Positions 352-50,385 of a stretch of 64,000 nt of DNA are shown here, piece by piece. Position 1 is the stretch's first letter; each line of letters starts with the position of its first letter. The DNA is taken from IMG/VR virus record IMGVR_UViG_3300032562_000004, positions 171,813 through 235,812 of that record. One strand, written 5' to 3'. The position numbers and the translations under genes are program-made. The notes beneath the pieces are model-generated. The model did no database searches. It was given only the letters and a program-made list of their open reading frames with translations, and had not been told where the DNA came from.

Positions 352-804
352 TTAGAACGAGTACTTAACACCTGCGGTTACGATGTTGCCATTGTAAGCC
401 TTAGTAATGTTATTACCTTTTTGGTAGGCATAATCAGCTACCAAATTTACATTCTTAACTACAGGATAGGCAATCCCTGCGCCAATAAATCCAGCACCAC
501 CATTACCTACGCCAGGTTTTTGTGTGTCAATAAATGCAGCTCCAGCACGAACATTAGTTTGTACGGGACCTAGTTTGATAACGTCATAACTCACAGATGC
601 TGTGTAACGATTAACATCAACAGCATTGGTAGTACTACGATCAAAAGTTCCTTGAACGCCAATTGCGCCAAATGATTGACCAACAGAAACGCCTGCGGTA
701 TCTTGTTTAGAGCCCATGTTGCGGCCACCAAAAACACCAACGTCAGTTGCGAAAGCAAAAGTAGTTGATGCTAATAATGCTACTGCTAAAATTACTTTTT
801 TCAT
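352..804 (-). CDS. Outer-membrane beta-barrel protein (Ail/Lom/OmpA-like)
   Basis: Signal peptide MKKVILAVALLASTTFAFA, alternating beta-strand pattern, C-terminal aromatic ...GVKYSF (BAM signal). Confidence 0.8.
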   Translation of the reverse strand: MKKVILAVALLASTTFAFATDVGVFGGRNMGSKQDTAGVSVGQSFGAIGVQGTFDRSTTNAVDVNRYTASVSYDVIKLGPVQTNVRAGAAFIDTQKPGVGNGGAGFIGAGIAYPVVKNVNLVADYAYQKGNNITKAYNGNIVTAGVKYSF

Positions 805-922
805 ACTAATAGTTCCTTTATGTTTATACTACTGAACAAATATTTATTGTTTTTTTGCGTTGGCCTGCAAAAATTGCTAGGTTTTGGCATATTTTTAAGT
901 TTAATATACGCATATAATGAAG

Positions 923-950
923 TCAAAAGAATAGGGGTCGAAGCCCCTAT
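923..950 (-). terminator. Rho-independent terminator ending the tmRNA transcript
   Basis: Minus strand ATAGGGG-CTTCGA-CCCCTAT-TCTTTT. Confidence 0.85.
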
Positions 951-1292
951 CTGTTATTTTCTGTTTCGACGGATAACTCCGCAAAGCAGTGATTAAACTG
1001 CTAATGTTTGGCGTTGTGCTGTACGAGCAGAGAAACGAATTCCCTTACCTGAAACAGTTACTTCGCCTTTAGATGCGTTTGCATTTAAGTTTTTCGCTTG
1101 ATTTACAGTCATCGCCTACTGTGTTGCCTCTTTCATTATCTCACCATGTCGAAACCTTGTCATCCCCACTGAAACATACTACAGCTTTTGGCCTCGCTAC
1201 CGATAACTCGGTTCGGTAATATGCTTCGGTGGAGATGCCGGGAATCGAACCCGGGTCCACAGCGCCTTCACTACGAAGGAATTACAACAATT
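951..1292 (-). ncRNA. ssrA: Circularly permuted (two-piece) tmRNA: acceptor piece ~1292..1228, intervening segment 1227..1168, coding piece 1167..~951
   Basis: T-arm plus 3' acceptor strand GGACCCGGGTTCGATTCCCGG-CATCTCC-ACC precedes the 5' strand GGGGATG-ACAAGGTTTCGAC. The 7-bp acceptor stem has G3.U70. A resume context AAACTTAAAT-GCA-AAC is followed by a tag ORF. Confidence 0.9.
993..1082 (-). other. tmRNA tag reading frame ANASKGEVTVSGKGIRFSARTAQRQTLAV*
   Basis: Resume codon GCA at 1082..1080, 29 sense codons, TAA at 995..993. Confidence 0.8.
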
Positions 1293-1294
1293 CT

Positions 1295-1498
1295 TTACAG
1301 CGGAAGAATATTTGATGCTTGCTTGCCTTTAGGGCCTGCCACTACATCGAATGTTACCGCTTGATTCTCTTTTAAACTCTTAAAACCATTTGTGCTAATT
1401 GCGGAAAAATGTGCAAACAATTCCTCACCACCAGCATCGGGGGTAATAAATCCAAACCCTTTTGCATCATTAAACCACTTTACTTTACCTGTTGCCAT
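1295..1498 (-). CDS. cspA: Cold-shock protein (CSD)
   Basis: [18 protein letters not shown] (RNP1) and LFAHFSAI (RNP2), 67 aa. Confidence 0.97.
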
Positions 1499-1525: not shown

Positions 1526-1555
1526 ATTATACTACTATTTTACCTATTTTGTCAA
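1526..1555 (-). promoter_or_regulatory. sigma70-type promoter for cspA/tmRNA
   Basis: TTGACA-N18-TATAAT upstream of the cspA SD. Confidence 0.75.
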
Positions 1556-1784: not shown

Positions 1785-1860
1785 TGGTGGTCCGGGTAGG
1801 ACTTGCACCCACACTCCCCGAATTATGAGTTCGACGCTTTACTTTTTAAGCTACCGGGCC
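1785..1860 (-). tRNA. tRNA with CAU anticodon, probably Ile2 (lysidine type) rather than Met
   Basis: GGCCCGG...TCGAA-CTCATAA-TTCGG...GTGGG-TGCAAGT-CCTAC-CCGGACC-A-CCA, 76 nt with encoded CCA. C4-G69/C5-G68 pairs favour Ile2. Confidence 0.88.
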
Positions 1861-2265: not shown

Positions 2266-2553
2266 TCAAGGATATACTTTTTCGCCTTGCTTGAGTAACA
2301 CTACGCTAAACTTATCAGTTTTGAATTGTGTGTTGAGTTTTTTGGCAAGATTGATTGCGTGACCTGGATTACTAAAACTTACTTTTTTATATTTAGGTCC
2401 AGGGTACTGAACTAATAAATTAGAAGTTTTAAGATTAACTGGTTTATTATCAAAGTAAACGGCCCATACTCCTTCCGAAGCAAGTACTTGCTCGGTTTTG
2501 TATGTTTGCTTGTTTGTAAGCTCAGCTAAAATGGTTGGCTTGGGGCGACTCAC
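2266..2553 (-). CDS. Hypothetical phage protein (MSRPKPT...)
   Basis: 95-aa ORF, GTG start overlapping the upstream stop (GTGA). Confidence 0.75.
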   Translation of the reverse strand: MSRPKPTILAELTNKQTYKTEQVLASEGVWAVYFDNKPVNLKTSNLLVQYPGPKYKKVSFSNPGHAINLAKKLNTQFKTDKFSVVLLKQGEKVYP

Positions 2554-3152
2554 TTAGAATTCCTTTTGAATAGTTCTTTTCGTGCTTCAGATATTTTTTT
2601 ACAAGTTTCTGGAGAACGCTTTTTACCTTTGTGGAGCAACGATATTTTTTGTTTGAATTCCTCACTTCGTGGAACCATTATTTGTTTAGCTCTAGCATCT
2701 TTTATTTTTTGTTTTGTTTCGTCACTATGCTTTTTTCCTAACATAGTAGGCGCTTGTTTTGCTCTAGCAGTTCGAATCTTTTCTTTACTAGACTCTGTAT
2801 GTCTATAGTTTTTACTATTTTCTCTAATTTTTTGTCTAGTGGACTCTTTTACAGTACCGTAACTACCTCCCATTAATCCATCTTCGGGTTTAATGTTAGC
2901 CCATTCTGCTGACTCGACAATTTTGTTTTCTGTAGAAAATTTTAAAGCGTATTCGACTAATGTTTCTTTATTATCGAATAGCTGACACCAAACGGTAGTA
3001 ACATCTAGACCGTGTTTATTAAGATGTGCCCGCCAGTGTACGCCAGATCCTAAATATTTGTTAGGATCCCGTATAGTTTTTCCAAAGTATTTTAGACCGG
3101 TAGTATTATGTTGCTTAATGTACAACCAGGTAGGTTTAAACGGTTTCGACAT
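2550..3152 (-). mobile_element. Free-standing GIY-YIG homing endonuclease with NUMOD3-type repeats
   Basis: WLYIKQHNTTGLKYFGKT...YLGSG..W N-terminus, ANIKPEDG, and repeats HTESSKEKIR / HSDETKQKIK / RSEEFKQKIS. Confidence 0.85.
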
Positions 3153-3403: not shown

Positions 3404-3774
3404 TGTTCTCTCTTTAAAAAGTTAGCTAGCTTAGGTGGTTCCCATCCCAATGGTTTAAGAATTTTACCATCTTCACGACGGCGTACTTTGCCCAGTTGAC
3501 GGTCAATTTTGGCAAAGTTAGTAGCCATTACCTCACGCCAAGCACCTTCACCATCTGCGCCCATCGAATTGATTGCTCCGATAGTAACGACAATAATATC
3601 GATTAAAGCATCAAGAGTTTCAACTTGATTTTTATTAGCAATAGCTACTTGTAGCTCGTCGTATTCTTCTGTAATCAATTTGGAGTAAAGTCTAAACTGA
3701 TCATCATTCATGCCTGAGATAGTCTGCTCGCAAGCTGTCATAAATTTTGCTGAATCCTTAAACGGGTTTGTCAT
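3400..3774 (-). CDS. MazG-like/all-alpha NTP pyrophosphohydrolase
   Basis: EEYDEL...ETLDALIDIIVV...SNFAK-like and GKILKP motifs. Start moved to ATG 3774 (MTNPFKD), which overlaps the upstream stop. Confidence 0.8.
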   Translation of the reverse strand: MTNPFKDSAKFMTACEQTISGMNDDQFRLYSKLITEEYDELQVAIANKNQVETLDALIDIIVVTIGAINSMGADGEGAWREVMATNFAKIDRQLGKVRRREDGKILKPLGWEPPKLANFLKREH

Positions 3775-4391
3775 ACTTTTTCCTTTTTCTTTAATTGTGC
3801 GTTGCGTCTTGCTTCGGACCAAGGCTTACCTTTATGCTGTGATCCATAAATCTTTTTTCTCTCTTCTTCTGTAAGAGAACTTCTATGTTGTAATGCCTTT
3901 TCTTGCATCACTACTTTTGTATCTTCTGAATGTTCTTTATCTCTAAACGGATTATTTTCCTTCATCCATTCTCTGTGTTTTTCTTTTCTTCTCTTTGCTT
4001 CTTCTTTATCCTGTTGTATCTCTTCGTAAGTCTTGCCTTTGTTTTTACCTGGCTTACCTCTGCTGGCATTGCCTATTTTAGTTTTTGCTTCTTCGGTATG
4101 ACTAAACGGACCACCATCGCCTGCTTCTGGTTTTAAGTTAGCCCACTCTGGACTATCTACTACCTGCCATAAGTCACTGTAGTACAGGCCCCAGGCTCTT
4201 ATTTCTTCATTATCTTTACACTCTTTTAATATTTCTGTATCAACATCATTGCCGTGTTTCTCGATATGAGCTGACCAACGCTTACCAGAACCTTTGTAAG
4301 TGTACGGATCTTGATTAGTCTTACCTAAATATTTTAATCCGGTTTTACGATGAGTTTTAATGTACAAGTAAATCATATTGTACTTAGTCAT
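3771..4391 (-). mobile_element. Free-standing GIY-YIG homing endonuclease
   Basis: YLYIKTHRKTGLKYLGKT..DPYTYKGSG, WANLKPEAGDGG, NUMOD3-like HTEEAKTKI / HSEDTK. Confidence 0.85.
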
Positions 4392-45954: not shown

Positions 45955-46683
45955 TTATGCTGGGATGATTTCCAGCGTTTTTCTAATTATACCAGGGGAT
46001 ATAAGCTCTAGCATAACTAGCCAGCCTTCCCCATCGTGATCTATAAAGAAATAATCTTGGGTCCGCAAATAAGGGGACTTTGATAGCCATTTAGCAAAAG
46101 CCGGAGCAACTCTTATAGTATCTTGTTGATTATTAAAAAAGTTAATTAAACTGTCTTTATTAGCTTGTGTTAGTTTTACGCTTTTAAAATAACTTCTGTG
46201 GGTAAACTTAGGAACTTTTAATTTAACAGTATTTTTAGGTCTCGATATTATAGCTTCTGTATATTCCTTATTGTCAAGGAAACTCATAGCATTAAGTCTT
46301 TTAAGTAAAGACATATTGTTACTGTATATCCAACCCAAGTTAACCGATGTAACTAATTTAAAATCAGCGGTTGTTGTAAGTAGTAACTCAGCTAATTCGT
46401 GAAGATCCTCAGAAGTTTTATCAGTAATATCTTTCCAACGCCTTGTTAATATAGTTTGAGCTAGTTGAGGTTGGCCGCCGGGACGAACTAAAGTCCAACG
46501 CTGTTGTGCGACTTCTCGCCACAACTTTCTACGATCAATAATAGCATCGATATAGTTGTGGTCGAGAGTCTTCATAGCACTTACTTCATCTAAAGCAAAT
46601 GCTACGCAGTATCGATATTTGTCGTAAAAGTATCTATCTTTATCGACAGGCTTAAACGTTAGGAGATTCGCCATCAAGAACAA
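45955..46683 (-). CDS. Hypothetical protein
   Basis: 242-aa ORF. Confidence 0.65.
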   Translation of the reverse strand: MFLMANLLTFKPVDKDRYFYDKYRYCVAFALDEVSAMKTLDHNYIDAIIDRRKLWREVAQQRWTLVRPGGQPQLAQTILTRRWKDITDKTSEDLHELAELLLTTTADFKLVTSVNLGWIYSNNMSLLKRLNAMSFLDNKEYTEAIISRPKNTVKLKVPKFTHRSYFKSVKLTQANKDSLINFFNNQQDTIRVAPAFAKWLSKSPYLRTQDYFFIDHDGEGWLVMLELISPGIIRKTLEIIPA

Positions 46684-48931
46684 TAATACCAGAATTGTCT
46701 ACAATCGCCAATGGAGCAGTTTGGATAATTGTAAAATCAATCTTATCATCGATTATGATAGCATTGACGGTGCAGTCAGATAAGCGTTCAAACAAAATCT
46801 TCTTAGACAAAGGTACACGAATCAATTCGTCAATCTTACGATTAAGTGGACGAGCACCCATCTTAGGATCATAACCTTTATCAGCTAGCATATCAATAAC
46901 TGCTTCGGATAAATTAAGTCTAATATTTTTATTGTTCAAACTAACTTGTAACTGTTCAACAAATTTAAGTACAACTTTCTTAATAGCAAGGGTATCAAGT
47001 TTCTTAAACTTACAAATTTGATCGATACGATTACGCAACTCAGGTTTGAAGAAGTCCTTCATTGCTTTATCTTCTGATCCTGTTTTTTGTAGTGCTTGAC
47101 CAAATCCAATGTTATTGTTTTCGTTATCGCGAGCACCTAAGTTACTTGTCATAATGATAATAGTATTCTTAAGGTTAACAGTTTTGCCGTTAGCACTAGT
47201 AATACGAGCTTCGTCTAACATCTGTAACATAATGTTAATAACATCAGGGTGAGCTTTTTCAATTTCATCAAACAGGATGATTGAATACGGATTCTTACTA
47301 ATATCACTGATTAACTTGCCGCCACCTACATTGCCATCTTCAAATCCTACATATCCTGGAGGCGCACCAATCAACGAACTTACAGTATGCTTTTCTTGAT
47401 ATTCTGACATATCATACTTTAATAATTGCATATCTAAGTTTGTAGCTAGTAACTTAGCAAGTTCTGTTTTACCAGTACCAGTTGGTCCTAAGAATAAGAA
47501 ACTAGCAATAGGACGATTGTCGTTGCCAATACCAGAAAAGTTAATATAAACTCGCTCAAGTACGCTGTCTACTGCTTCGTCCTGACCATATAATTTTTCT
47601 TTAATATTCGATTCAAGTTCTACAATATTAGCTGAACGCTCGTTTTGTAATCGATCCATAGGAACTTCAGTAACACGACTTAATTGTTCCATAATCATTT
47701 CTTTAGTAATAGTTACATTACCTTGATCCTTAACTCGTTCCTTAGCGCAAGCGCCGTCTAACAAGTCAATACTCTTATCTGGATTCTTACGGTCGTGTAT
47801 ATAACGACCTGATAAATCTACAGCGGCCGTGATAGCATCTGTATCAATTAATACATTGTGGAATGATTCTAAGCGTGGGCTAAGTCCAATAAGGATTTGT
47901 TCTGTAACTTCGTTAGTTGGTTCATCGATACTTACACGATGGAAACGACGCATTAACGCACGATCCTTTTCAAAGGACTCGTAGTATTCTTCCCATGTTG
48001 TACTTGCGATTACCTTAAGTTTACCTTTAGTAATAGCAGGTTTTAACATATTAGCAAAGTCAAGTGTAGATTGTGAGCTAGCGCCAGCACCTTTCATAGT
48101 GTGTGCTTCGTCTACAAACAAAATACAATTACCTTTAGTTTCTAATGCGCCAATAACTTGTTTGAACTTTTCTTCAAATTCGCCGCGATATTTAGAACCA
48201 GCTAACAATGATCCAATCTCTAATGCCCATACTTCATGAGCAATTAAGAACTTAGGAACACGATTATTAATAATCTCTTGAGCTAGGCCTTCTGCGATAG
48301 CAGTTTTACCTACCCCGGGATCTCCAACCATCAATACATTAGCTTTAAATTTACGAGCTAATACTGTAATCATTTCATCAAGTTCAGCACCGCGGCCAAT
48401 CATTGGCTCAAGGCGATCTTCTACCGCCATCTTAGTTAAGTTAACACAGTATTCAGTTAAAATTTCATCTGCTTGCGTAGTTGTAAGAACTACATCATCA
48501 TGTTTGTAGTGTGCTTGCCAGTATTCCATGAACTCTTGTTTCTTAACACCATACTTTAATAAAAAGTAATGTGCGTGTGAATTATTTTCAGCCATCATAG
48601 CAAGATACAAGTCGCCAGTATTCATTGAACGGCGCCCTGTGAACAATACTTGTGTCATTGCTCTGTTGAAGCAACGCTCGAGAGCATTTGTTTTCTTAGG
48701 CTGATTGTCTTTTTTAGTAGTAACCAAACTAGTTAAACTTTGTAAGTAAGCATCTAACTCCATATCTAATAAATCTACACTAGTCCCAAAAGATTCTAGT
48801 ACTTTATAAAATGGAGCATGGCGTATTAATACCAATAAGACGTGCTCAGTTAAAACATATTCGTGTTGACGCTCTTTAGCCAATTTAACAGCTTGGGCGA
48901 CGATTTGTTCGATTTCTTTATTGTTTTGCAT
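46652..48931 (-). CDS. clpA: ATP-dependent Clp protease ATP-binding subunit ClpA
   Basis: Clp N-domain, two AAA+ modules (GDPGVGKT, GPTGTGKT), DMSEY, LFDEIEKAHPD, MGARPL; no ClpB middle domain. Confidence 0.93.
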   Translation of the reverse strand: MQNNKEIEQIVAQAVKLAKERQHEYVLTEHVLLVLIRHAPFYKVLESFGTSVDLLDMELDAYLQSLTSLVTTKKDNQPKKTNALERCFNRAMTQVLFTGRRSMNTGDLYLAMMAENNSHAHYFLLKYGVKKQEFMEYWQAHYKHDDVVLTTTQADEILTEYCVNLTKMAVEDRLEPMIGRGAELDEMITVLARKFKANVLMVGDPGVGKTAIAEGLAQEIINNRVPKFLIAHEVWALEIGSLLAGSKYRGEFEEKFKQVIGALETKGNCILFVDEAHTMKGAGASSQSTLDFANMLKPAITKGKLKVIASTTWEEYYESFEKDRALMRRFHRVSIDEPTNEVTEQILIGLSPRLESFHNVLIDTDAITAAVDLSGRYIHDRKNPDKSIDLLDGACAKERVKDQGNVTITKEMIMEQLSRVTEVPMDRLQNERSANIVELESNIKEKLYGQDEAVDSVLERVYINFSGIGNDNRPIASFLFLGPTGTGKTELAKLLATNLDMQLLKYDMSEYQEKHTVSSLIGAPPGYVGFEDGNVGGGKLISDISKNPYSIILFDEIEKAHPDVINIMLQMLDEARITSANGKTVNLKNTIIIMTSNLGARDNENNNIGFGQALQKTGSEDKAMKDFFKPELRNRIDQICKFKKLDTLAIKKVVLKFVEQLQVSLNNKNIRLNLSEAVIDMLADKGYDPKMGARPLNRKIDELIRVPLSKKILFERLSDCTVNAIIIDDKIDFTIIQTAPLAIVDNSGIIVLDGESPNV

Positions 48932-48994
48932 GTTTTCCTTTGCTTGGTACTAGTTAAGTATATAGCATTACTAAACAAAATACAATGATTATGG

Positions 48995-49789
48995 TTACTT
49001 CTTTTGTGCTTCTTTGATAAGATTGGTTAGTTCGTCACTTAGGCTAGATGGCATTTTGGCATGAATTCTAACTAATAAATCGCCAACAGGTCCTTGGCGT
49101 GAAGCTAGTCCTCTACCTTTCAGACGCAATAGTCCGCCTGGCTGTGTTAACGGTGGAATGGTTAAAGTTAATTGGTTACCCAAAATATCTTTTACTTCTG
49201 TTTCTCCGCCAACTAAACAATCCCAAATAGATACTTGCTGGTCCATTGTTAAGTTTAATCCTTGGCGATGCCATTTTGGATGTTGATGTATTCTAAAATT
49301 AACAATTAAATCTGTGTTACCAGGACCTATGCCAGGATATTGAATATTATCGCCATCGTTAAGTCCCAATGGGATTTCTATTTCAATTGTCATTGAGCCT
49401 TGCTGTGTACCTACAGTAACAGGCCGCTTGCCGCCTTGTGCTACATCTTGTAATGTTACCCATAAGCTCATTCTGGTATGGGTTTGTCGTTGCTGTCCTG
49501 GATGTTGATGCCCTGGATGAAACTGTGCGCCAAACATACTAAAGATATTGTTAAAATCGAACCCGCCACCATTAAATTCAAAATGTATATTTTGATTAGG
49601 ATTATCGTATTGGGCTCGTTTACTAGGATCGCTTAATGTTTCATAAGCCGACTGAACCGATTGAAATTTAGCTTTATCGCCACCTTCGCGGTCTGGATGA
49701 TACTTTGCCGCCATACGGCGATATGCTTTTTTAATATCGTCAGCAGACGCATTACGGTCTACTCCTAAGGTTTGATAGTGATCTGTCAT
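48995..49789 (-). CDS. dnaJ: DnaJ/CbpA-type co-chaperone (J-domain + C-terminal domain, no zinc finger)
   Basis: [10 protein letters not shown]...YHPD..GD...AYETLSD; LRLKGRG..GDLLV. Confidence 0.92.
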
Positions 49790-50385
49790 ATTGTAATAAA
49801 TGTGCAATTTTTTCGTATTAGATAGGGAGATAAATTTGTAGCCGCCATTGCTTCTCTAATAGAAGCATATTCAATACCATTAAGTAATAACGGTTTTGAG
49901 GCGGCGTTCTCTTTACCTGTCCTGTTGCCTTTTTGTTTTTGACTGCTCTTACGTTTTCTATCATTGGAACAAGGTATTCCATATAATGGATGATTACTAC
50001 CTTTCATTCGTTCGCTTTGTGCTGGATTCTTCTTACCGCCCCAGACACTTAGCTCACCGACGTATACACCTTTTAATGCTTTACTTCGTTTGGCTCGAAC
50101 TTCTGGAGATATATTACTTCCGCCTTCGCCGCCATCTGTTTGATTTGCTAATATGCCAGTACCGATGTCTTTGCGCCCAAACTTTTTAATAAGTTTTTTT
50201 TCGAGGTCAAACGCTTCCTCCTCAAATAAAGATTTGGCAATTATTATAATTCGATTTTTATCTGATGGTGGTTTATAAGTGCGTTTTTTTGACCATGCTC
50301 GATCACCGGACCCCTTACCTATGTAGTAAGGGGATTGCCCGTCTTTACGAAGATAAGCATAAACATAGAATTTTGGGTCAGTCAT
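49786..50385 (-). mobile_element. Free-standing GIY-YIG homing endonuclease
   Basis: FYVYAYLR...PYYIGKG...E...N.TDGGEG; NUMOD3-like tail; own TTTACA-N17-TATAAT promoter. Confidence 0.88.

What the first reader, a model, noticed from the sequence alone, without database searches (positions are those of the whole stretch)
993..1082. Atypical 29-residue tmRNA tag ending LAV, in a genome that also encodes ClpA
Seen: the tag is ANASKGEVTVSGKGIRFSARTAQRQTLAV*. It lacks the usual ANDE(N/Y)...ALAA pattern, is long and basic, and ends in LAV. The same window encodes a full ClpA (46652..48931) and a DnaJ. Known: ssrA tags route proteins to ClpXP/ClpAP, the upstream residues bind SspB, and the C-terminal residues determine ClpX recognition. 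Inference: the phage may redirect rescued nascent chains away from host ClpXP/SspB towards its own ClpA, or stabilise them.
Basis: partly seen in the sequence, partly recalled or inferred. Interest (0 to 1): 0.7.

Follow-up and report, generated by a model that had tools for sequence, protein, structure and literature searches.

The report
Jumbo-phage tmRNA with rebuilt long tag
A freshwater jumbo phage carries its own two-piece ribosome-rescue RNA (tmRNA) whose tag was rebuilt by a 19-codon insertion into a conserved 29-residue peptide shared by about 100 related phage contigs; this suggests the phages give rescued proteins a non-standard fate, but a specific link to the phage's own ClpA is not supported.

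Summary
Window 902-1319 (minus strand) is a circularly permuted, two-piece tmRNA (Rfam 118 bits) with G3:U70. Its resume codon sits in the conserved UAAAU-GCA context and the tag is 29 residues ending LAV.

It is not a one-off. About 100 IMG/VR contigs from lake phages of roughly 320-350 kb carry the same tag family. That family has a conserved core (GEVTVSGKxVKF, pN/pS 0.39), variable flanks and an invariant (L/F)AV end. On a ClpA tree the long-tag phages form one clade nested among relatives with canonical tags such as ANDEQFALAA.

Alignment shows the long tag is a canonical AN...LAA tag with an exact 57-nt in-frame block inserted. The cassette is kept while the tmRNA body is exchanged. A metatranscriptome contig covers just the coding piece.

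ClpA and ClpP are also present in canonical-tag relatives. ClpA has no clade-diagnostic residues. The phage also encodes ClpS. Tags ending in valine are known to remain ClpXP substrates. No SmpB is encoded, so the RNA depends on the host's.

The same phage carries a second tmRNA with a canonical tag, outside the window. The most likely reading is a still-degradative tag with altered routing. This is a new variant of a known kind.

The parts
1526..1555 (-). Sigma-70-type promoter-like site (TTGACA, 18 nt, TATAAT; 12 of 12 matches) upstream of csp. Candidate promoter for a csp-tmRNA co-transcript.
   Evidence: This is a consensus match only.
1295..1498 (-). Cold-shock protein gene (67 aa, CspE/CspD-like). 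Its stop codon lies 5 nt before the first tmRNA model position.
   Evidence: (PF00313, E 2e-28). The RNA-library contig X24 is 100% identical over 1366-1502.
1228..1289 (-). tmRNA acceptor piece: 3' strands of P2, the T-arm, the acceptor 3' strand CAUCUCC, discriminator A and CC. The next base is G, so the terminal A of CCA is not encoded.
   Evidence: Rfam alignment; sequence.
1168..1227 (-). Intervening spacer between the two pieces, expected to be removed by processing. It is hypervariable among relatives.
1083..1167 (-). 5' part of the coding piece: acceptor 5' strand GGGGAUG (1161-1167, giving G3:U70), GGUUUCGAC, the P2 5' strands, the short 'class A' PK1 stem and the UAAAU resume context.
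996..1082 (-). Tag reading frame of 29 codons. Codons 1-2 (A-N) and 27-29 (L-A-V) are homologous to a canonical tag. Codons 3-26 correspond to the inserted or replaced block, which contains the conserved core GEVTVSGK-x-(V/I)-(K/R)-F.
993..995 (-). UAA stop codon, lying in the loop of a hairpin (GCAGU / ACUGC).
969..982 (-). Post-stop hairpin (GCGGA-GUUA-UCCGU) supported by compensatory changes across the family. Its loop may pair with AUAAC at 953-957 to form a pseudoknot (seen by eye, not tested formally).
   Evidence: pairs with 6, 2 and 13 double changes.
925..951 (-). Intrinsic terminator (8-bp stem, 4 G-C pairs, T-run). The stem sequence differs between relatives but always pairs.
1785..1860 (-). 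tRNA-Met (CAU), the last member of the phage's tRNA array. The tmRNA lies at the edge of that array.
46652..48931 (-). ClpA-type double-ring AAA+ unfoldase (759 aa).
48995..49807 (-). J-domain co-chaperone (270 aa, DnaJ/CbpA-like: J domain plus DnaJ_C). Context gene.

Best explanation
This is a functional, phage-encoded, two-piece tmRNA.

How it works (inferred from the standard tmRNA pathway). It is probably transcribed with the upstream csp gene, cut into an acceptor piece and a coding piece, and charged with alanine by host AlaRS through G3:U70. It must be delivered to stalled ribosomes by host SmpB and EF-Tu, because no SmpB is encoded by the phage. Translation resumes at GCA and appends a 29-residue peptide.

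What the tag is (shown). The peptide is a remodelled canonical tag. An exact 19-codon in-frame block replaces the middle of an AN...LAA tag, and the last alanine has become valine with a compensating change in the stop-codon hairpin. The remodelled cassette arose once in a clade of roughly 320-350 kb freshwater jumbo phages. It is kept under purifying selection in its core even where the surrounding tmRNA body has been exchanged.

What it most likely does (inferred). The hydrophobic (L/F)-A-V-COOH end still works as a C-terminal degron for AAA+ proteases, with ClpXP-type recognition and possibly weaker than LAA. The conserved, basic core, which looks able to form a beta-hairpin, replaces the host adaptor (SspB-type) site. 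That would change routing or kinetics, through a different adaptor or protease, or by giving proteases a longer handle to engage. The result would be that products of ribosomes stalled during infection are handled differently from host-tagged ones.
For: - Gene identity.
- G3:U70 and the partly encoded CCA.
- No SmpB in the roughly 320 kb composite of this phage or in 11 related large records, including two near-complete genomes.
- Family size: 64 loci from a tag-based scan plus 32 further loci from a scan anchored only outside the tag. All carry the same tag family.
- Selection in the unbiased set: core codons 6-20 have pN/pS 0.39. Length changes are whole codons only (87, 90 or 96 nt). In the earlier tag-pattern sample the other two frames carry stops in 36 of 36 and 29 of 36 sequences.
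- Single origin: 9 of 9 long-tag phages form one ClpA clade (SH-aLRT 98) nested among canonical-tag phages.
- Insertion: G018 (long tag) and G031/G029 (canonical tag) share one body and differ by an exact 57-nt block. G023 and G036/G048 are a second such pair.
- Backbone classes alternate inside the clade while the tag is retained.
- RNA structure downstream of the tag covaries.
- Expression: RNA-library contig X27 covers only the coding piece of a close variant.
- A terminal valine is compatible with ClpXP.
- A second tmRNA with a canonical tag in the same phage hints that the two tags are not redundant.
Against: - No biochemical data exist. Tagging, degradation and the two-piece processing are all inferred.
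- The flanking tag segments evolve at pN/pS of about 1 or more.
- Codons 7-9 and 17-19 never vary even at wobble positions. RNAalifold pairs codons 6-10 with the stop region. Part of the conservation may therefore be RNA-level rather than peptide-level.
- The A-to-V change sits in a covarying helix, so the valine could be a by-product of RNA constraints.
- No tag-specific partner protein was found.
- The host and its own tag are unknown.
- The RNA contigs come from metatranscriptomes that could contain some DNA.
- The beta-hairpin character of the core is my reading of the residue pattern, not a computed result.
Confidence: 0.55

Rival explanations
1. One reading: the long tag routes rescued chains to the phage's own ClpA-ClpP machine, and away from host ClpXP and SspB.
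For: The phage encodes an apparently competent ClpA, with both Walker A/B pairs, the KYRG and GYVG pore loops, and IGF at the ClpP-docking loop. It also encodes a ClpP that retains Ser, His and Asp. Both near-complete long-tag genomes have ClpA and ClpP.
Against: ClpA and ClpP are equally present in sister phages with canonical tags, and ClpA predates the long tag. None of 432 variable ClpA columns is diagnostic for the long-tag clade. The phage also has ClpS, which in E. coli reduces ClpA's interaction with ssrA tags. Tags ending in valine remain ClpXP substrates.
Confidence: 0.15
2. A specificity switch to another host protease, Lon or FtsH, as happened with the long Mollicute tags. The exposed beta-strand-like hydrophobic and basic core would act as a Lon-type degron. 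Alternatively the 29-residue length would provide the long unstructured handle that FtsH needs.
For: There is a precedent: Mollicute tags are long and are recognised mainly by Lon (PMC9382460). The core alternates hydrophobic and polar residues with flanking Lys/Arg. The phage encodes no Lon of its own, so it would be using the host's.
Against: The retained (L/F)AV end looks like a ClpX/ClpA-type C-degron rather than the Mollicute ...YAFA end. There is no direct evidence, and the host's protease set is unknown.
Confidence: 0.15
3. Rescue without a special fate: the phage needs only the ribosome recycling. The long frame would then be conserved mainly because its nucleotides form RNA structure needed for tmRNA folding or function, and the appended peptide would have no specific partner.
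For: Wobble positions in codons 7-9 and 17-19 are invariant. A predicted long-range helix joins tag codons 6-10 to the stop region. The L/F codon and the A-to-V change covary with hairpin partners. The flanks evolve at pN/pS of about 1 or more.
Against: The core has pN/pS 0.39, with free wobble variation at codons 10-12, 15 and 20. Multi-nucleotide changes keep the residue class, for example CGT to AAG, Arg to Lys. Indels are always whole codons. Canonical-tag relatives with the same body work without these 57 nt, so the block is not needed for tmRNA architecture.
Confidence: 0.15
4. Interference: the phage tags many truncated host proteins with a slowly processed tag. These would occupy host ClpXP or another protease or adaptor, protecting phage proteins or blunting protease-dependent defences.
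For: The evidence is indirect only. Tags ending in valine are degraded more slowly than LAA-type or LVA-type tags. One phage keeps a separate tmRNA with a canonical tag.
Against: No data bear on this directly. Eighteen of the 19 large long-tag records have only the long-tag tmRNA.
Confidence: 0.07

Closest known systems
Two-piece tmRNA of Methylophilales phage Melnitz and pelagimyophages (PMC9004378)
   Same: A phage-encoded, circularly permuted ssrA in aquatic myophages. That paper counts 53 two-piece tmRNAs among 402 tmRNA-bearing phage genomes, mostly from aquatic sources.
   Different: Those tmRNAs are alpha-type. Loci of that kind in my first scan have short tags such as GEQVEMAMAA. Melnitz is controlled by a glutamine riboswitch. 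No conserved long tag is described there.
Betaproteobacterial two-piece tmRNA (Rfam RF01850) and its canonical tags
   Same: It is the best clan match for the window gene (117.6 bits). Sister phages carry beta/gamma-style tags such as ANDEQFALAA on the same body.
   Different: The tag has a 19-codon inserted block and ends LAV instead of LAA. The structured domain after the tag is very short: two hairpins and a terminator.
Long Mollicute ssrA tags with a specificity switch to Lon (reviewed in PMC9382460)
   Same: A natural long tag of about 27 residues whose non-canonical sequence changed the protease that reads it. This is a precedent for tag remodelling leading to re-routing.
   Different: Those are cellular, one-piece tmRNAs ending ...YAFA, in organisms that lack ClpXP. 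Here the tmRNA is viral and two-piece, and the C-terminus stays close to LAA.
tmRNA (and SmpB) genes of huge phages and of mycobacteriophages such as Bxz1 (PMC7162821, PMC4131195)
   Same: Large phages that carry translation-rescue RNA alongside big tRNA sets.
   Different: Some huge phages also encode SmpB; this lineage does not. Neither paper reports a conserved remodelled tag.
Engineered E. coli ssrA variants ending AAV or ASV (PMC11003136)
   Same: A C-terminal valine after a small residue. Degradation is intermediate and ClpXP-dependent.
   Different: Those variants keep the AANDENY adaptor site and are 11 residues long. The exact ending LAV on a 29-residue tag has not been tested.

Membership tests
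tmRNA, circularly permuted (two-piece) form | Gene order: acceptor piece (T-arm, acceptor 3' strand) upstream of the coding piece (acceptor 5' strand, P2, PK1, tag frame) | tested here: met
   RF04321 matched over positions 1-213 of 213, 118.4 bits against a gathering score of 47. ARAGORN flags the gene as permuted.
tmRNA, circularly permuted (two-piece) form | tRNA-Ala-like acceptor stem with a G3:U70 pair | tested here: met
   GGGGAUG pairs with CAUCUCC, giving G3:U70 (sequence).
tmRNA, circularly permuted (two-piece) form | 3' CCA end on the acceptor piece | tested here: inconclusive
   The window encodes A-C-C then G. The relatives L010 and L030 encode CCA. The terminal A would have to be added by a CCA-adding enzyme.
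tmRNA, circularly permuted (two-piece) form | Alanine resume codon in a conserved upstream context, with a short frame ending at a stop codon inside a hairpin | tested here: met
   The UAAAU-GCA context is universal in the family. The stop lies in the GCAGU/ACUGC hairpin loop and its partners covary.
tmRNA, circularly permuted (two-piece) form | Processing into two separate RNAs | tested here: inconclusive
   The metatranscriptome contig X27 (196 nt) covers only the coding piece of a close variant. It starts about 9 nt inside the predicted 5' end and does not enter the spacer. These are assembled contigs rather than mapped ends, and DNA carry-over is not excluded.
tmRNA, circularly permuted (two-piece) form | An SmpB partner | not testable with these tools
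   No SmpB is found in this phage or in 11 related large records. It must come from the unknown host.
Canonical ssrA degradation tag (ClpXP/SspB type) | C-terminal ...ALAA-COOH | tested here: not met
   The family ends (L/F)AV in all unique sequences examined.
Canonical ssrA degradation tag (ClpXP/SspB type) | N-terminal AANDENY-type segment (the SspB site in E. coli-type tags) | tested here: not met
   Only A-N (or A-K) is retained. Residues 3-26 are the new block.
ClpA (ATP-dependent Clp protease ATP-binding subunit) | Clp_N domain, two AAA+ modules, no long middle domain, and a ClpP-docking tripeptide loop | tested here: met
   Pfam finds Clp_N, AAA, AAA_lid_9, AAA_2 and ClpB_D2-small. The protein aligns end to end with E. 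coli ClpA 1KSF at E 1.7e-169, with IGF where E. coli has IGL, and retains KYRG, GYVG and both Walker A/B pairs.
ClpA (ATP-dependent Clp protease ATP-binding subunit) | NCBIfam equivalog trusted cut-off (TIGR02639) | tested here: not met
   803 bits against a cut-off of 993. ClpA is still the best-scoring family. I call it ClpA-type rather than a curated equivalog.

The most novel reading that the evidence does not exclude
The 19-codon block is a virus-specific addressing cassette. It would be a mobile, selected module that is carried or exchanged between different phage tmRNA bodies. It would re-programme the output of host trans-translation during infection by sending products of stalled ribosomes to a phage-chosen adaptor, protease or sequestration route that canonical tags do not reach. 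In that case phages would exploit tmRNA as a programmable tagging device and not merely as extra rescue capacity.
Probability: 0.25. Interest if true: 0.8.

Novelty: new variant of a known kind. Interest (0 to 1): 0.62.

Why it matters
Phage tmRNAs are usually treated as borrowed host genes that add ribosome-rescue capacity. Here a large, environmentally recurrent clade of jumbo phages has rebuilt the message part of the tmRNA. It keeps that rebuilt part under selection while the RNA body around it is swapped. This implies that what gets written onto rescued proteins matters to the virus.

The finding offers a natural and compact experimental handle: a 29-residue peptide with a well-defined conserved core and canonical-tag sister alleles on the same RNA body. 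That handle can be used to ask how tag sequence sets protease or adaptor choice, and what trans-translation does during infection. The tag could also serve as an orthogonal degron for synthetic biology.

The work also corrects the attractive but unsupported idea that the tag is paired with the phage's ClpA.

Tried and rejected
1. Looking for a tag-specific partner gene. I compared three long-tag genomes (the composite of G001+G000, G018 and G019) with two canonical-tag genomes (G030, G031). Five ORFs were specific to the long-tag set. The best lead was a 93-aa protein (P0001) lying 1-3 kb from ClpP in G018 and G019, with a C-terminus loosely like SspB's LRVVK. A profile search found nothing in G030 or G031. 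A wider search then found it in the canonical-tag genomes G032, G033, G034, G035 and G044, so it was rejected.
2. ClpA co-adaptation. None of 432 variable columns is diagnostic of the long-tag clade.
3. Phage-encoded SspB or Lon. None was found.
4. Host inference.
   - The 31-mer acceptor sequence is shared with Actinobacteria, Chloroflexota and CPR bacteria, so it says nothing about the host.
   - The nearest isolated phages are distant: DNA polymerase 43-50% identity, ClpA 40%.
   - blastn of the tmRNA against isolated phages matches only the T-arm and acceptor region.
5. A donor for the 57-nt block. Only chance-level matches were found in five genomes.
6. The 39-aa ORF from ATG 1112 that contains the tag frame. 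Its ATG lies inside the class A PK1 sequence (GGCGAUGAC), a motif that class B backbones lack, so I reject it as an ordinary gene.
7. My first selection estimate was biased by my own search pattern. I redid it on a sample defined by anchors outside the tag.
8. PMC516066 (Sharkady and Williams) is not held. PMC10862746 had nothing on LAV.
9. I sent no complex-prediction job, because I do not claim any specific protein pair binds.

Full report
**1.

Rfam matches the permuted-tmRNA model end to end (1050-1289, 118.4 bits, E 1.7e-22) and the betaproteobacterial two-piece model (1024-1330, 117.6 bits).

Reading the sequence against the Rfam alignment gives this layout:
- The acceptor piece runs 1289..1228 and ends A-C-C followed by G.
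- A spacer runs 1227..1168.
- The coding piece starts at GGGGAUG (1167).
- GGGGAUG pairs with CAUCUCC to give the G3:U70 alanine identity pair.
- The resume codon GCA (1082-1080) lies in the consensus UAAAU-GCA context.
- The frame runs 29 codons to UAA at 995-993. The stop lies in a hairpin loop.
- A second hairpin and an intrinsic terminator follow (951..930).
- A cold-shock gene (1295..1498) ends 5 nt before the tmRNA. It is preceded by a perfect -35/-10 match at 1555..1526, so co-transcription is likely.

**2. The setting**

The window is part of a 158.5 kb IMG/VR virus record. Its first 74,056 bases are identical to the last 74 kb of a 235.8 kb record, G001. Together the two describe about 320 kb of one phage. 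CheckV's label of 100% complete for G001 is therefore wrong.

The phage recurs in lake and freshwater metagenomes from 2012 to 2020. It has a family-B DNA polymerase. Its nearest isolated relatives are distant jumbo myophages.

It carries more than 30 tRNA genes and a large proteostasis set:
- ClpA-type and DnaJ/CbpA-type genes and Csp, inside the window;
- ClpP next to a GroES-type gene, outside the window;
- ClpS next to an Hsp20-type gene and DnaK, outside the window.

ClpA and ClpP look catalytically competent and able to dock on each other. No SmpB, SspB or Lon is encoded.

**3. A family, not a one-off**

A scan of IMG/VR with the acceptor 31-mer, which does not depend on the tag, found identical copies of the tag. 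It also found two diverged versions, alongside phage two-piece tmRNAs with canonical tags. A codon-degenerate tag pattern then found 64 loci.

That pattern fixes the core, so I repeated the scan with anchors only outside the tag: the resume context, the post-stop hairpin and a downstream motif. This gave 80 loci, 32 of them new. All but one encode the same tag family in frame; the exception, L426, has a frame length that is not a multiple of three. The core shows natural variation.

In this unbiased set:
- The core (codons 6-20) has pN/pS 0.39.
- Codons 21-27 have pN/pS of about 1.0.
- Codons 2-5 toggle among small polar residues.
- A1, A28 and V29 are invariant. The last two are partly tied to the hairpin I anchored on.
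- Frame lengths are 87, 90 or 96 nt, so only whole codons are gained or lost.

In the earlier tag-pattern sample the other two frames are closed. Multi-base changes keep the residue class, for example CGT to AAG.

There is a caveat. Codons 7-9 and 17-19 never vary even at wobble positions. RNAalifold pairs codons 6-10 with the stop region in an invariant helix, which is therefore untestable. Some of the constraint is probably at the RNA level.

**4. Origin of the long tag**

ClpA relatives at 69-100% identity occur on at least 80 IMG/VR contigs, out of 316 confirmed stretches. In 23 large ClpA-bearing contigs, the tmRNAs found without reference to the tag are mostly canonical: ANDEQFALAA, ANDSQFALAA and ANDEKFLMAA. 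There are also possible intermediates: ANAANDEVFALAA, a 26-residue form, and a 31-residue long variant.

On a ClpA tree all nine long-tag phages form one clade (SH-aLRT 98) nested among canonical-tag phages.

A direct alignment shows how the tag was built. The G018 long-tag tmRNA and the G031 and G029 canonical-tag tmRNAs share nearly the same coding-piece body up to GCA-AAC-G. G018 then has an exact 57-nt block. The sequences re-join at L-A-V-stop against L-A-A-stop, with the hairpin partner strand changed to match. A second pair, G023 against G036/G048, shows the same thing on the other backbone type.

Two backbone classes, with a short or a long PK1, each occur with both tag types. They alternate within the long-tag clade: the window is class A, its ClpA sister G025 is B, G019 is A, G020 is B, G022 and G023 are A, and G018 is B. 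The tag cassette is therefore what is retained while bodies are exchanged, or else the cassette itself moves. No donor for the block was found.

The long-tag gene sits at the edge of the tRNA array in a conserved neighbourhood, the same position as the canonical tmRNA in G030 and G031.

**5. Expression**

In freshwater metatranscriptome X27, a 196-nt contig matches a long-tag variant (L171) with three mismatches and two single-base gaps. It begins about 9 nt inside the predicted 5' end of the coding piece and does not extend into the spacer or the acceptor piece. No flanking protein-coding DNA is covered. Another library has a 100%-identical piece of the csp gene.

This suggests a stable, separate coding-piece RNA. 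It is not proof, because these are assembled contigs and DNA carry-over is possible.

**6.

- ClpA and ClpP are present in canonical-tag sister phages, and ClpA predates the long tag.
- No ClpA column distinguishes the two groups.
- The phage also has ClpS, which in E. coli reduces ClpA's interaction with ssrA tags.
- ssrA variants ending AAV and ASV are degraded in a ClpXP-dependent manner, at intermediate rates.

What the new tag clearly lacks is the canonical N-terminal segment that acts as the adaptor site.

A screen for genes gained with the long tag gave one lead, a 93-aa protein near ClpP. It failed on wider sampling.

**7. A second tmRNA**

The same phage has a second permuted tmRNA at G001:143567-143966, outside the window. 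Its tag is canonical (ANDESYALAA). It has a different acceptor stem that still carries G3:U70, an encoded CCA and a class B body, and it lies in a non-syntenic region. It is not a recent duplicate.

Among the 19 large long-tag records checked, only this one has two tmRNAs. A near-identical strain, G002, lacks the second copy. This is weak evidence that the two tags are not interchangeable.

**8. Verdict**

Shown:
- a bona fide phage two-piece tmRNA;
- a translated frame whose core is under purifying selection;
- a single origin by a 19-codon in-frame insertion into a canonical tag;
- retention of the cassette across body exchanges;
- dependence on host SmpB;
- no specific association with ClpA.

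Inferred: the (L/F)AV end still acts as an AAA+ protease degron, and the new core changes routing or kinetics. The rivals are phage ClpAP, Lon or FtsH, rescue-only with RNA-level constraint, and protease interference.

The literature I could search describes phage two-piece tmRNAs and long cellular tags. It does not describe this conserved remodelled phage tag. I rate it a new variant of a known kind and of moderate-to-high interest.

Noticed in passing
G001:143567-143966 (minus strand; locus L413:1410-1809), outside the window: A second permuted tmRNA in the same phage. It has the canonical tag ANDESYALAA, a different acceptor stem (GUGGGCG/CGCCUAC) and an encoded CCA. Within the tmRNA clan its best Rfam match is the alpha type. 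It lies in a non-syntenic accessory region and is absent from the near-identical strain G002.
   Followed up: partly
G000:C1:120536-124111 (L003) and 139820-143056 (L004), outside the window; plus window 46652-49807 and 1295-1498: An unusually complete phage proteostasis set: ClpP next to a GroES/Cpn10-type gene, ClpS next to an Hsp20/IbpA-type gene and DnaK, plus ClpA, a DnaJ/CbpA-type gene and Csp. ClpA and ClpP are shared with canonical-tag relatives.
   Followed up: partly
G000 and G001 records: G000 positions 1-74056 are 100% identical to G001 positions 161757-235812, so the two records are overlapping pieces of one genome of at least 320 kb. CheckV's 100% completeness for G001 is an overestimate: related genomes with terminal repeats are 344-353 kb.
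   Followed up: yes
L023, L027, L031 (IMG/VR loci): Another long-tag family in phage two-piece tmRNAs that share the same acceptor 31-mer. These tags are 26 residues, contain ...SFTGNTV(K/G)G..., and end with a canonical VAVAA. The S/T-x-S/T-G-x-x-V-K stretch loosely resembles the core of the tag studied here. Long tags may have arisen more than once, or the two families may be related.
   Followed up: no
window 2550-3152 and 3771-4391 (minus strand): ORFs close to the tmRNA and tRNA array. ORF 2550-3152 has a NUMOD3 motif and is homing-endonuclease-like. On the 320-kb composite it and ORF 3771-4391 match each other at 36% identity and both match one G031 ORF. Such elements could promote the recombination seen around the tmRNA.
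   Followed up: no
window 352-804 (minus strand): A 150-aa ORF immediately downstream of the tmRNA, with a signal-peptide-like N-terminus and a weak match to an outer-membrane beta-barrel family (PF13505, E 7e-4, below the cut-off). It has no homologue in the other four genomes compared.
   Followed up: no
G001:167835-167929 (upstream of the window; also L009, L016, L026, L038): ARAGORN calls a 95-nt tRNA-Ile with anticodon UAU at an unusual position (31). The call recurs in several relatives. It may hold an intron or an extra arm, or it may be a mis-call.
   Followed up: no
G000:C1:108429-108710 (L398:501-782, minus strand) and G001:5906-6181: A small (~93 aa) protein family with no Pfam match, present in two copies in this phage. 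It lies 1-3 kb from ClpP in G018 and G019 and has a conserved ...R(I/V)(I/V/M)NLS C-terminus. It is found in both long-tag and canonical-tag jumbo phages. Its function is unknown.
   Followed up: partly
G029 (L311, L313), 331 kb record: Its tmRNA scores only 38 bits against RF04321 and ARAGORN misses it. Even so, a canonical ANDEQFALAA frame on a class B body is readable. Its acceptor piece appears diverged or displaced.
   Followed up: no
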